Shown: piece after piece, positions 46,489 to 49,020 of the stretch | Layout: the number at the start of each line of letters is the position of its first letter | Numbering within the stretch: position 1 is the stretch's first letter | DNA from: Heteronotia binoei | Lineage: Eukaryota | Direction: 5' to 3' | DNA length: 64,000 nucleotides | Assembly: GCF_032191835.1 (NCBI RefSeq) | Contig: NC_083223.1 | Span: 83,018,001-83,082,000 of the forward strand | Made by a program: the position numbers and the translations under genes | The notes under the pieces: generated by a model | What the model was told of the DNA's origin: nothing | Database searches by the model: none | The model's input: only the letters and a program-made list of their open reading frames with translations

Positions 46489-49020
46489 ATGACTGTCTGT
46501 TAAGGACGCTTTAAACATGCACAAAGCAAAAAATTGTATCATACAACATAGACCAAGACTTATTTTTTTAATAAATCAAGTGCTCTTTTGATATACTACT
46601 TAAAACTGAAGCTTACAGCTTACATTTTATGTGACCAACTAAATAGACCGGGGTCTCACCAGCACTCATTGCAATAAATATGTATAAGCATGAAAGACTG
46701 ACACCAGAGATGCAGGGACAAAAGTTTTCATTTCTAAAGAAGTATTATTTCATAAAATTAATGACAATGAACAGGTGCCATTCCCAAAACAATATCAAGT
46801 AAGGCTGGCAGTTTCAAAGTTGTAATTACTGGTTTTCAGGTGATTAGCCTTAGGAAAGAGTACTTATTTGGAATAAAAACACAAATACATGTAATAATCT
46901 AATTTTTAAAAAGATAAATTCTCCCTCACCTTATTATATGTGCAAGCCAAATCAAAACCAAAGCTAAAATTCTCATTTATCCATTTCTTCTGATATGATT
47001 GCAGATTGTCAGTGAAGACAATGGAAAATGTCAGTGAAACTGAGATGTTTCAGTGACCTTCATGGAATAAATTTTAATAGATAAGTGGGCAACCACACTG
47101 ATAGCATTTGAGTGTGTTAAAGATTGTGTGTCAAAAGCTTTCAGTACTTTAATTTTTTTTCTTTAAACCATGTAAAGGAAGTACATTTTACATGGTCTTT
47201 AAATTTATTCCAATAAAAATGTCTTCCACATAAAGATATAAACTTGTTTGCATATAACATTTAAACCACAACTGACCTCCTCCAATGAGATTGTTGGGAT
47301 AGAAATATAACATTTACGTGAAATGCTGTTTAAATATTGTTTACTAAAACAAGTCAAAATAAAAACATGATAAGTCAGATCACTATTTAGGACATAAAAA
47401 AAAATTAATTCAAATTTTCCCAGAAAACCCACATAACTGAAAGGTACACACCCCCAGACATCTGACAAGGAGCTAAGACTGGTGCCAACATCCATTATGT
47501 GGCTGGAAACAGGGTCAGTTCCACAGAACAGCAAGCTCATTTGCCAGGACACAGACCCACAGAAGGGCCCAAGACCACCTCAAGAAGGACAAAGTGTGAA
47601 ATAATTTTGTTTGGAAACCTCCTCTTTCAAGTTAAGGGGATCCACTGAGGCTGCTTTGCTTTAAGTCCCCAAAACCTATGGAATCAGTACTGTTTAGAAG
47701 TGGGTATCCCTCTTTAAACTTCTTGTGTGTACTACTTTAAGCACAAAAAATGGAGGAAAATGCCCTGCCCCTTTAACAGAAGCATAATATGTGAAAATGG
47801 GGAACTAAAGGTTTTCATGGCATGGATGTAAATAACATCCCTTGGTAAATAACATCACATGCAGTCCCTATTAAAGTGACAGGACACTTTTTCTGCAGGA
47901 AGCCGGAAACTCTGTCAATAGAACAGACAATTGTGCTGACAGTGGAATATTATTTACAAACAAGGTTACATTTAATGTCTTTAAAATATAATTATCCTAA
48001 TCCAGAAGCTCATATGTGCACTGAAATGCACACATGCCTCCTGTGCATCATACAGACTTCCCCACCCATTTCAATACAAGTGCTTTTCTATGTGTGCACA
48101 TGGAGTCACTCCCTCCACAATACGAATGGCAAAGTCATAATGATAAAAAACTGCATATGATTTGGAAGACCCTACATAAGGACATTTAAGATATACATCT
48201 TGTTTTAAGGGCCTTTAACTAAACTTGATGCATTATTTTAATAGGAAGATACCTAGATGCAAAAATAATTTAGATCAGTACTTCTGTTCTATGGCAAACA
48301 CTGTGACATTTATGCACAAAATATCTGGTTTTCTTATTTCCTTTTTCTTTCCAGTATTTAAAACAAATCGCTGTAAAGGCCACAAAAATTGCAGTAGATC
48401 ATCTAAATGACTGATACATTTCAGTATTCCATTAAAAATTATTCTTTTTCACAGAAAACCAAACAAATATCCATATCGTTTTCTTGTACTATTTTAAGGA
48501 AGCAATATTTTAAAATAAACATTATAAACAAGCAAGTGTTTGACTGAATTTTAAGCGCTTGAGTGATAAGATACAAAAGGAAACTTTGGCAGTTACCTCC
48601 ATGTCACGTGATCTTGACCTTTACTCTTTAGGGCTTGCTAGATGGACTTGACAAGGGCCGTAGAGCCAACCAAATCAGACTTGGCTTTGACTTTGGAACT
48701 CTGAGCAAATGTCGGAAAGCCGAAGCCTTAACTTGGTGTTGCGGCTTTGTCTTTTCCTTGAAAAAGGACTTCCCCTCTTCCAGTTTTCTTTTTATCTGTT
48801 TCCACCCTCCCTCTTTATTCCTTGAAGCTTGAACTTTAAAGGTGTCTTTTGGCTTGCCTGCTTGAACTCTATCTAACCAGGTTCATTCAAACTTTGGGGT
48901 GCTTGCCAGCCACTGTGGACTGCTTTACAATTTCTGAGACAAAGAAATAAATACATTAAGTTAGGACGCAGTAACAACAATTCACCTCAATTTTCAAAAA
49001 CACAGTGAAATAAAGGATAT
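46489..49020 (-). other. SRSF12: U12-type (minor spliceosome) intron 2 of SRSF12
   Basis: 5' site ATATCCTTT at 49020-49012; branch site TCCTTAAC at 46506-46499; reading frame requires the 3' end to be ...CAT|G. Confidence 0.9.
48597..48933 (-). other. SRSF12: Candidate poison (PTC) exon inside SRSF12 intron 2
   Basis: CTAAC branch, pyrimidine tract, tctcag| acceptor, GAG|gtaact donor; stops in all three frames within 60 nt; GA-rich interior. Confidence 0.7.

What the first reader, a model, noticed from the sequence alone, without database searches (positions are those of the whole stretch)
48597..48933. U2-type poison exon nested inside the U12 intron of SRSF12 (twintron-like autoregulatory switch)
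Seen: a 337-nt segment beginning 87 nt after the U12 donor, with a CTAAC branch, pyrimidine tract, CAG acceptor and GAG|GTAACT donor, stops in all three frames within 60 nt, and a GA-rich core (gaataaagagggagggtggaaacagataaaaagaaaactggaagaggggaag). Exon 2 contains U2 donors (GTGAGT at 49108, GTATGG at 49095), and an AG 4 nt before the U12 3' end could serve as the U2 exit. Established: SR genes autoregulate through poison exons, and SRSF10 does so through an exon within its minor intron and binds GA-rich RNA. Inference: SRSF12 keeps a paralogous major-versus-minor spliceosome switch, possibly cross-regulated by SRSF10. I do not know of it being described in reptiles.
Basis: partly seen in the sequence, partly recalled or inferred. 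Interest (0 to 1): 0.8.

Follow-up and report, generated by a model that had tools for sequence, protein, structure and literature searches.

The report
SRSF12 conserved non-coding exon in minor intron
Inside the rare "minor-spliceosome" intron of the splicing-factor gene SRSF12 lies a stop-filled, non-coding exon-like segment that is as conserved as the coding exons from lizards to frogs and mammals and is the sister copy of the exon through which the related gene SRSF10 throttles its own production.

Summary
On the minus strand, 87 nt after the ATATCCTTT minor (U12) donor of SRSF12 exon 2, a 337-nt segment (48933-48597) has a CTAAC branch site, pyrimidine tract, CAG acceptor, GAG|GTAACT donor, stops in all frames and a purine-rich core.

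It is far more than chance. Only exon 2, this segment and exon 3 align between squamates; the rest of the 2.5-kb intron does not. The segment is 95% identical to snake and Anolis, 64-78% to a frog and 75-85% to a rhinoceros.

The segment aligns with exon 3 of fish SRSF10 and carries the SRSF10 binding motif AAAGACAAA. So it is the paralogue of the SRSF10 autoregulatory exon.

Published human tables flag a cryptic exon in this intron in testis, without coordinates.

No paper in the library describes this for SRSF12. I class it as a new member of a known kind.

The parts
49021..49125 (-). SRSF12 exon 2 (first half of the RRM); ends ...TATACA
   Evidence: Translation (R)[35 protein letters not shown]; matches SRSF12 proteins.
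49012..49020 (-). U12-type (AT-class) 5' splice site ATATCCTTT
   Evidence: Identical in Anolis, Pseudonaja, Spea, Psammomys, Diceros, L008 and in SRSF10 of eel and bichir. MIDB gives the same string for human SRSF12.
48934..49011 (-). Spacer between the U12 donor and the nested acceptor. The 5' half is poorly conserved. The 3' half holds CTAAC (48964-48960), a pyrimidine tract and CAG (AG at 48935-48934).
   Evidence: The 3'ss part is 95/86/80/76% identical to snake/Anolis/frog/rhino; the 5' half is 80/64/58/29%.
48597..48933 (-). Nested non-coding alternative exon (337 nt to GAG|GT; 359 nt if it runs to the U12-like site at 48575). Paralogue of SRSF10 exon 3.
   Evidence: Conservation. Stops in all frames and non-3n length variation (337/336/334/319/347). 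Homology to eel and bichir SRSF10 exon 3.
48769..48820 (-). Purine-rich core, a candidate exonic splicing enhancer. It contains AATAAA at 48819-48814.
   Evidence: Nearly invariant between lizard and frog. 74% purine over 48840-48765. Aligns with the GA-rich part of SRSF10 exon 3. AATAAA becomes AGTAAA in rhino and AATAAG in the rodent, so it is probably not a poly(A) signal.
48746..48754 (-). AAAGACAAA, an exact match to the SRSF10 (SRp38) SELEX consensus
   Evidence: Invariant in window, snake, Anolis, frog, rhino and L008. Motif as cited in PMC8522700 and PMC9022966. Eel SRSF10 exon 3 has AAAGACAAG.
48604..48630 (-). TAAAGAGTAAAGGTCAAGATCA module with TCAAG repeats near the exon's 3' end
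   Evidence: 19-nt exact match to eel SRSF10 exon 3. Present in all 8 SRSF12 and SRSF10 loci aligned.
48591..48599 (-). U2-type 5' splice site GAG|GTAACT
   Evidence: GAGGTAAY is invariant in all six SRSF12 loci with an intact block. AAG|GTAAC sits at the same place in eel and bichir SRSF10.
48566..48574 (-). U12-type 5'ss-like motif GTATCTTAT. Deep conservation ends here.
   Evidence: GTATCC in Anolis, frog, eel and bichir SRSF10; GTATCT in window and snake; GTATTG in the two mammals. Meinke 2020 describes a rarely used minor 5'ss at the end of SRSF10 exon 3. GTATCTT is the 5'ss of the accepted RALGAPA2 minor intron.
46489..46506 (-). U12 branch site TCCTTAAC (46506-46499) and the 3' end of intron 2 (...CAGTCAT|G), giving apparent AT-AT termini. 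An AG lies 4 nt upstream.
   Evidence: Branch A to 3' end is 11-12 nt.
46385..46488 (-). SRSF12 exon 3 (second half of the RRM)
   Evidence: G + [34 protein letters not shown] + A, followed by the donor GTAAGT.
53274..53338 (-). SRSF12 exon 1 coding part, with U2-type donor AG|GTGAGA. A possible upstream partner of the nested acceptor.

Best explanation
The segment is a real alternative, non-productive exon of SRSF12 and the paralogous counterpart of SRSF10 exon 3.

Two outcomes compete for the pre-mRNA:
1. The minor spliceosome pairs ATATCCTTT at 49020 with TCCTTAAC at 46506 and removes the whole 2532-nt intron. This joins the two halves of the RRM and gives productive mRNA.
2. The major spliceosome recognises the strong internal 3' splice site (CTAAC, pyrimidine tract, CAG) and defines the exon. 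It is helped by the purine-rich enhancer, which holds the AAAGACAAA site, and by the paired 5'ss-like elements at the exon's end (GAG|GTAACT for U1, GTATCTTAT for U11).

Inclusion puts stop codons 6-58 nt into the exon in every frame. The transcript is then either an NMD target or a truncated dead end.

By analogy with SRSF10, SRSF12 protein itself, or SRSF10 (RRMs about 80% identical), binds the enhancer and promotes inclusion. That would give negative feedback whose set point depends on minor-spliceosome activity.

Shown here: the anatomy, the exon-like pattern of conservation, and the homology to SRSF10 exon 3.

Inferred: inclusion in this species, which donor feeds the acceptor, which protein binds, and the fate of the RNA. 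The candidate feeding donors are exon 1's donor with exon 2 skipped, or a weak GT in the spacer.
For: 1.
2. Between squamates, only exon 2, this block and the exon 3 flank align across the intron.
3. The identity pattern looks like an exon. Identity rises at the branch site and pyrimidine tract, stays at coding-exon level through the segment, and collapses about 33 nt after GAG|GT, just past the GTATC motif.
4. It does not code for protein. Stops are kept at nt 6/44/58 and length differences are not multiples of 3.
5. It is homologous to SRSF10 exon 3. There is a 19-nt exact match in the matching position in eel. Local alignments give z = 5.5 (eel) and 8.6 (bichir) against 300 dinucleotide shuffles. 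All 8 loci share the end module AAAGAGTAAAGGTCAAG...AG|GTAAY...TTTTGTATCC. This matches Meinke 2020's description of SRSF10 exon 3: a GA-rich enhancer plus an unused minor 5'ss.
6. AAAGACAAA is invariant and is the published SRSF10 binding consensus.
7. For the human orthologue, Olthof 2019 Table S7 flags cryptic-exon use inside the SRSF12 minor intron (CAT9), plus CAT3, CAT6, CAT7 and CAT8 events, in testis and cortex.
8. There is no Rfam match on either strand.
Against: - No RNA evidence from this species.
- The runs that hold the stretch look like targeted capture of a conserved element rather than transcripts. They are tiny runs holding 0.5-0.7 of a 1.2-kb genomic stretch.
- There is no conserved strong U2 donor that could join exon 2 to the acceptor. 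The spacer is only 82-87 nt in squamates and frog, the in-exon GTs are not conserved, and the best spacer GT would leave a 52-nt intron.
- In the window the U12-like motif has T at +6. In the two mammals it has degenerated.
- The block has decayed in the rodent Psammomys (36-52% identity), so it is dispensable in some lineages.
- The human table gives no coordinates, and its uniform MSI of 1 may partly reflect misaligned non-canonical junctions.
Confidence: 0.7

Rival explanations
1. The block is a conserved intronic regulatory element that is never included as an exon. In this reading, decoy splice sites and U1/U11 and SR-protein binding sites tune the speed or efficiency of U12 intron removal or retention. 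This resembles USSE-type or NRS-type pseudo-splice-site elements.
For: No conserved U2 donor is available to feed the acceptor from exon 2. U1-type and U11-type 5'ss-like motifs sit side by side at the end of the block. No read-level evidence of inclusion was obtained.
Against: A complete branch site, pyrimidine tract and CAG are invariant over more than 300 million years. The homologous SRSF10 segment is an experimentally verified exon. The human table reports cryptic-exon reads in this intron.
Confidence: 0.13
2. The block is used only as an extension of exon 2, with no nested splicing. Either the transcript reads through the U12 donor and ends in or after the block (an alternative terminal exon with premature polyadenylation), or it uses the distal GTATCY as an alternative U12 5' splice site 446 nt downstream.
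For: SRSF10 exon-3 transcripts mostly end at a poly(A) site in or after exon 3. The distal U12-like donor is conserved. A genome annotation models an SRSF12 product that reads from exon 2 into the spacer (P0135). The exon 2 read-through frame stops after 10 codons.
Against: This reading does not explain the invariant branch site, pyrimidine tract and CAG while the 5' half of the spacer drifts. No conserved canonical poly(A) signal was found. AATAAA at 48819 is AGTAAA or AATAAG in mammals, and there is none in the 190 nt downstream.
Confidence: 0.1
3. The block is a DNA-level ultraconserved element, such as a transcriptional enhancer, that merely happens to lie in the intron. The splice-site look-alikes are incidental.
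For: Many small sequencing runs of several related organisms hold exactly this stretch, as expected for a capture target chosen for its conservation.
Against: The conserved features are strand-specific RNA signals placed at the block's edges. The same order of elements is kept in the paralogue SRSF10 at a different position within its intron. SRSF10 exon 3 works at the RNA level.
Confidence: 0.05

Closest known systems
SRSF10 exon 3 / minor-intron autoregulatory module (Meinke et al. 2020, eLife, PMC7244321)
   Same: - The intron is in the same position, between the two RRM-coding exons, and has the same ATATCCTTT donor and CCTTAAC branch site.
- There is an internal U2-type acceptor.
- The exon is non-coding and purine-rich and carries an SRSF10-type binding motif.
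- AG|GTAAC is followed by a GTATCC minor-type 5'ss at the exon's end.
- The exon sequences are directly alignable.
   Different: - The exon sits only 82-143 nt after exon 2. In eel SRSF10 it is about 340 nt away and in bichir about 12 kb.
- No conserved downstream major 5'ss (the 'E2a' site) was found.
- The intron ends in AT (AG in the frog) rather than AC.
- No clear poly(A) signal was found.
- Function in RNA is untested, and SRSF12 is a weakly expressed gene.
Ultraconserved poison exons of SR-protein genes (unproductive splicing coupled to NMD; own knowledge of Lareau 2007 and Ni 2007; Leclair 2020 is cited)
   Same: A stop-laden cassette conserved at or above coding-exon level inside an SR gene. 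It is expected to lower protein output when included.
   Different: It is nested in a U12-type intron, so inclusion competes with a different spliceosome. The flanking donor on the upstream exon is not U2-type.
Nested U2-in-U12 introns ('twintron'), e.g. Drosophila prospero (reviewed in PMC8329584)
   Same: A U2-type splicing unit inside an AT-class U12 intron, with a purine-rich element involved in the choice.
   Different: prospero yields two coding isoforms. Here the internal unit brings in a non-coding exon with stops.
U11-binding splicing enhancer (USSE) of SNRNP48 and RNPC3 (own knowledge: Verbeeren et al. 2010)
   Same: A U12-type 5'ss-like sequence downstream of a U2-type 3' splice site could define a non-productive exon through U11 binding.
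   Different: The USSE is a tandem pair of U12 5'ss motifs in 3'UTR regions of minor-spliceosome protein genes. Here there is a single motif next to a U1-type site, and U11 binding is untested.

Membership tests
SRSF10-type nested autoregulatory exon in a minor intron | U12-type intron between the two RRM-coding exons (ATATCCTTT donor, TCCTTAAC branch site 10-15 nt from the 3' end) | tested here: met
   Conserved in 6 SRSF12 orthologues and 2 SRSF10 loci. MIDB lists the human SRSF12 intron.
SRSF10-type nested autoregulatory exon in a minor intron | Internal U2-type 3' splice site (branch site, pyrimidine tract, AG) inside the minor intron | tested here: met
   CTAAC, T-rich tract and CAG at 48964-48934. 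Invariant or near-invariant in lizard, snake, frog, rhino, L008 and rodent.
SRSF10-type nested autoregulatory exon in a minor intron | Competing major 5' splice site just downstream of the minor 5' splice site of exon 2 | tested here: not met
   There is no conserved GT with a reasonable PWM score in the 82-87-nt spacer. The only good one (GAG|GTGAAT, window only) leaves a 52-nt intron. Eel SRSF10 has AAT|GTGAGA at +19.
SRSF10-type nested autoregulatory exon in a minor intron | GA-rich exonic enhancer carrying SRSF10-type binding motifs | tested here: met
   Met at sequence level only. The core is 74% purine and AAAGACAAA is exact and invariant. Protein binding was not tested.
SRSF10-type nested autoregulatory exon in a minor intron | Minor-type 5' splice site at the end of the exon | tested here: met
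   GTATCTTAT at 48574. GTATCCTAY in Anolis, frog, eel and bichir; degenerate in the two mammals.
SRSF10-type nested autoregulatory exon in a minor intron | Alternative polyadenylation site in or just after the exon | tested here: inconclusive
   The only AATAAA (48819) lies in the GA core and is not conserved in mammals. There is no canonical hexamer in the next ~190 nt.
SRSF10-type nested autoregulatory exon in a minor intron | Sequence homology to SRSF10 exon 3 | tested here: met
   19-nt exact match. Smith-Waterman z of 5.5 and 8.6 against shuffles. The 3'-end module aligns in 8 loci.
SRSF10-type nested autoregulatory exon in a minor intron | Exon inclusion seen in RNA and raised by the gene's own protein | not testable with these tools
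There is only indirect human evidence, without coordinates.
Poison exon (AS-NMD cassette) | Premature stop more than 50 nt upstream of a downstream exon junction when the exon is included | tested here: met
   Met in silico. Stops occur at nt 6, 44 and 58 in the three frames, conserved in five species. Exon 3, exon 4 and the last exon lie downstream.
Poison exon (AS-NMD cassette) | Usable U2-type splice sites on both sides, with partners in the flanking exons | tested here: inconclusive
   The exon's own acceptor and donor are good and conserved. But exon 2 offers only a U12 donor and exon 3 only a U12-type acceptor. The plausible partners are exon 1's donor and exon 4's acceptor, or the U12-like donor paired with exon 3.
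Poison exon (AS-NMD cassette) | Isoform stabilised when NMD is inhibited | not testable with these tools
   No such data could be reached.

The most novel reading that the evidence does not exclude
The major-versus-minor spliceosome switch described for SRSF10 is not a peculiarity of one gene. It is an ancient module that predates the SRSF10/SRSF12 duplication and has been kept in both paralogues for more than 400 million years. The two genes may cross-regulate through the shared AAAGACAAA/GA-rich enhancer. The exon may be defined by a conserved dual U1/U11 site (GTAAY followed by GTATCC). In SRSF12 it may be fed from exon 1, skipping exon 2. That would make 'exon 2 + exon 3, joined by the minor spliceosome' and 'nested exon, spliced by the major spliceosome' mutually exclusive outcomes.
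Probability: 0.3. Interest if true: 0.75.

Novelty: new member of a known kind. Interest (0 to 1): 0.6.

Why it matters
SRSF10 is presented in the literature as the only SR-protein gene with a minor intron, and as the link between minor-spliceosome activity and SR-protein levels (PMC7244321).

This locus shows that its paralogue SRSF12 has the same minor intron and a homologous nested non-coding exon, conserved from frogs to lizards to mammals. Three things would follow:
- The switch can be dated to before the paralogues split.
- It offers a ready explanation for the tight, tissue-restricted and often very low expression of SRSF12 (PMC12330525).
- It predicts cross-talk between SRSF10, SRSF12 and the minor spliceosome that can be tested with minigenes.

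It also flags a practical problem. The intron's non-canonical ends (AT-AT or AT-AG) make gene predictors mis-join exons 2 and 3 in several genomes.

Tried and rejected
- **Read-level RNA evidence.** There are therefore no junctions or depth for this species.
- **Share-of-words from the look-up of sequencing runs.** Three runs labelled 'metatranscriptomic' hold the exon completely. They also hold 0.50-0.71 of a 1171-nt genomic stretch despite being only about 100 M letters. Dozens of tiny runs from other organisms hold 0.35-0.38. I read this as capture of a conserved element, not as proof of expression.
- **Exact look-up of ORFs** in and around the exon, to fish out assembled transcripts: none is in the collection.
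- **phmmer with the exon 2 read-through peptide.** It gave many short SRSF10/12-like ORFs. The SRSF12-type ones were either unspliced genomic ORFs (P0133) or a genome annotation model (P0135, locus L008). None were transcript contigs.
- **Rfam** on both strands: no match.
- **Hairpin sequestering GAG|GTAACT.** RNAalifold predicted it, but single-sequence folds give z of only -1.2 to +0.25. The stem is not kept in rhino or in SRSF10. Rejected as unsupported.
- **AATAAA at 48819 as a poly(A) signal.** It is not conserved in mammals and sits in a purine tract with no downstream GU-rich element. I consider it part of the enhancer.
Present, but not conserved.
- **Tetrapod SRSF10 locus for direct comparison.** The only candidate protein (P0076) is not on record. 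Fish SRSF10 loci were used instead.
- **Zootoca SRSF12 (P0029).** Not on record.
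Full report
**Gene and anatomy**

The feature lies on the minus strand in a gene whose exons translate to the SRSF12 RRM and RS domain.
- Exon 1 coding part is 53338-53274 ([21 protein letters not shown]...), exon 2 is 49125-49021 and exon 3 is 46488-46385, followed by exon 4 and a last exon.
- The RS-domain ORF (45112-45486) finds mammalian SRSF12.
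- Full-length relatives named SRSF12 from lizards, snakes and frogs match the RRM exons.

Exon 2 ends ...TATACA and is followed by ATATCCTTT (49020). The only TCCTTAAC in the intron is at 46506-46499, 11-12 nt before the point where the reading frame resumes. Intron 2 (49020-46489, 2532 nt) is therefore a U12-type intron, with apparent AT-AT ends in this species.

**The observation**

- The segment is 337 nt (48933-48597) and starts 87 nt after the U12 donor.
- CTAAC lies at 48964-48960, followed by a T-rich tract and CAG.
- The donor is GAG|GTAACT.
- First stops fall at nt 6, 44 and 58 in the three frames.
- The purine-rich core is about 74% purine, against 48% in the rest of the intron.
- GTGAGT is at 49108 and GTATGG at 49095.
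- An AG lies 4 nt before the end of the intron.

**Is it more than chance?**

I fetched SRSF12 loci from six species: Anolis sagrei (L001), Pseudonaja textilis (L002), the frog Spea bombifrons (L003), the rodent Psammomys (L004), the rhinoceros Diceros (L005) and a further mammal (L008).

In blastn of window 49250-46300 against these loci, only two things align. One is a single block running from exon 2 through the candidate exon. The other is exon 3 with its immediate flank. The remaining ~1.9 kb of intron gives nothing, even between squamates.

Identity by region:

| Comparison | Exon 2 | 5' half of spacer | Branch site / tract / AG | Three thirds of the segment | 33 nt after the donor | Next 57 nt |
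|---|---|---|---|---|---|---|
| Snake / Anolis | 97 / 95% | 80 / 64% | 95 / 86% | 94-96% | 94% | 67-70% |
| Frog | 88% | 58% | 80% | 78 / 75 / 64% | 85% | 38% |
| Rhinoceros | 90% | 29% | 76% | 75 / 85 / 83% | 76% | 31% |

The segment is therefore conserved like the coding exons, and its edges coincide with splice signals. It does not code. The stops at nt 6/44/58 are kept, and lengths differ by non-multiples of three (337, 336, 334, 319, 347). Rfam finds nothing on either strand.

In Psammomys only the acceptor region and a fragment of the GA core survive.

Deep conservation does not stop at GAG|GTAACT. It continues through AAAGTTTCC TTTT GTATC and ends there.
- The GTATC motif is GTATCCTAY in Anolis and the frog. 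That is a good U12-type GT-class 5' splice site.
- It is GTATCTTAT in the window and the snake. GTATCTT is the 5'ss of the accepted RALGAPA2 minor intron in the MIDB table.
- It is GTATTG in the two mammals.

**Paralogy with SRSF10 exon 3**

Meinke et al. 2020 (PMC7244321) showed how SRSF10 regulates itself. Exon 3 lies inside its AT-AC minor intron and is spliced by the major spliceosome. It carries a GA-rich SRSF10-dependent enhancer, ends with a rarely used minor 5' splice site, and is mostly polyadenylated. The review PMC8329584 draws the same picture.

I fetched SRSF10 loci of eel (L006) and bichir (L007). Both have the same ATATCCTTT donor and CCTTAAC branch site. Inside the intron both have an exon-3-like unit: TCCTAAY, a pyrimidine tract and CAG, then a GA-rich stretch.

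Three results show that the SRSF12 segment is homologous to this unit, not merely analogous:
- A 19-nt exact match (window 48627-48609) at the matching place in the eel intron.
- Local alignments of the 5' half, including the GA core, with z = 5.5 (eel) and 8.6 (bichir) against 300 dinucleotide-preserving shuffles.
- A shared 3'-end module in all eight loci: AAAGAGTAAAGGTCAAG(ATCAAG)...AG|GTAAY...TTTTGTATCC.

The exact SRSF10 SELEX consensus AAAGACAAA (PMC8522700, PMC9022966) sits at 48754-48746. It is invariant in lizard, snake, frog and both non-rodent mammals. Eel exon 3 has AAAGACAAG. The SRSF10 and SRSF12 RRMs are about 80% identical, so shared RNA specificity is plausible but untested.

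**How the exon would be joined**

This remains open.
- Exon 2 offers only a U12 donor.
- SRSF10 solves this with a major donor a few nucleotides further downstream (AAT|GTGAGA at +19 in eel).
- In SRSF12 the spacer is only 82-87 nt in squamates and frog, and 117-143 nt in mammals. It holds no conserved GT of reasonable strength. The one decent site (GAG|GTGAAT, window only) would leave a 52-nt intron.
GTGAGT is GTGAAT in the snake and ATGAAT in Anolis. GTATGG is lost in snake, frog and rhinoceros.

The routes that use only conserved canonical signals are these:
- Exon 1's donor AG|GTGAGA to the nested acceptor, skipping exon 2.
- On the 3' side, either GTAAY to a U2-type acceptor (exon 4, or a cryptic AG before exon 3), or GTATCY to the U12 3' site of exon 3.

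In every case stops follow within 20 codons.

**RNA evidence**

I could not obtain any for this species.
- The runs that hold the stretch behave like capture of a conserved element.
- Look-ups meant to retrieve assembled transcripts gave only genomic or annotation-derived ORFs.

Indirect evidence exists for the human orthologue. Olthof et al. 2019 (PMC6717393) list the SRSF12 intron in MIDB with 5'ss TCAATATCCTTT and branch site GTGTCCTTAACA. Their Table S7 flags the following around this intron, all at MSI 1:
- alternative 5' and 3' sites inside the intron (CAT6, CAT7) in cerebral cortex and testis;
- cryptic-exon use (CAT9) in testis;
- skipping of the upstream exon (CAT3) in testis;
- an extended downstream exon (CAT8) in testis.

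No coordinates are given. The uniform value of 1 may partly reflect misplacement of the non-canonical junction. I therefore treat this as consistent with the model, not as proof.

**Known or new?**
- No paper in the searchable library links SRSF12 to a minor intron or a nested exon.
- Meinke et al. state that SRSF10 is the only SR protein gene with a minor intron, and left SRSF12 out for low expression.
- A 2025 preprint devoted to SRSF12 does not mention the intron or the exon.
- The minor intron itself is in MIDB.

So the kind of system is known (the SRSF10 module). The SRSF12 copy, its depth of conservation and its homology to SRSF10 exon 3 appear undescribed. It is a new member of a known kind.

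**Verdict**

It is not supported in its splice-partner details, and it is untested for expression and regulation.

Confidence that this is a genuine non-productive alternative exon homologous to SRSF10 exon 3 is about 0.7. Confidence in autoregulation or cross-regulation specifically is lower, about 0.4.

Noticed in passing
window 46485-46510 (minus strand); L001-L008: The minor intron's 3' end is not AC. It reads ...CAGTCAT|G (AT-AT) in the window, snake, Anolis (CAATCAT) and Psammomys, and ...CAGTCAG|G (AT-AG) in the frog. In SRSF10 it is ...CAGCAC|G (AT-AC) in eel and ...CAGCAT|A (AT-AT) in bichir. In Diceros the base after ...GTCAT is T, which would change Gln to His unless the junction lies elsewhere.
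   Followed up: partly
proteins P0021, P0003, P0013, P0018, P0206, P0234: Gene predictors mis-join exons 2 and 3 of SRSF12 and SRSF10 in several genomes (e.g. ...FAYLVMFEDV...FAYVQYPLFYFLVIFEDV...PEDLRLIFEDV). The likely cause is that the intron's ends are non-canonical.
   Followed up: no
L004:10937-11420 (Psammomys SRSF12): In this rodent the nested exon has decayed (36-52% identity) while its acceptor is kept. A perfect CTG|GTAAGT donor has arisen 27 nt into the exon, which could define a 27-nt micro-exon.
   Followed up: no
window 48403-48596 (minus strand): Squamates share a further ~190 nt of weaker conservation (67-70%) downstream of the exon. It is absent in frog and mammals, and no canonical poly(A) hexamer lies in it.
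   Followed up: partly
window 48150-49320; runs X1-X37: Dozens of very small public runs (28-190 M letters) from several organisms hold just this conserved stretch. Three labelled 'metatranscriptomic' hold 0.5-0.7 of 1171 nt. The locus looks like a target of a conserved-element capture kit, and the RNA label of those runs is doubtful.
   Followed up: partly
window 48655-48725 (minus strand): RNAalifold predicts a long hairpin inside the exon (ACCAAGTTAAGGCTT... pairing with ...AAGCCAAGTCTGATTTGGT). It is kept in five species with one compensatory change. There is too little variation to judge it.
   Followed up: partly
window 48600-48630 and the matching places in L003, L005-L008: TCAAG repeats (GGTCAAG / GTTCAAG / ATCAAG) just upstream of the exon's donor are shared by SRSF12 and SRSF10. 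This may be a binding platform for an unidentified factor.
   Followed up: no
window 45546-45583: read laying refuses any stretch containing these places (a filter that, per the tool, says nothing about what they are). They lie in the intron just upstream of the last SRSF12 exon.
   Followed up: no
window 45430-45486 versus P0029, P0033: Annotated lizard SRSF12 proteins of 236 aa lack the ~20-residue [20 protein letters not shown] stretch that the window's last-exon ORF and the python protein (P0031) contain. This suggests alternative acceptor use at the last exon.
   Followed up: no
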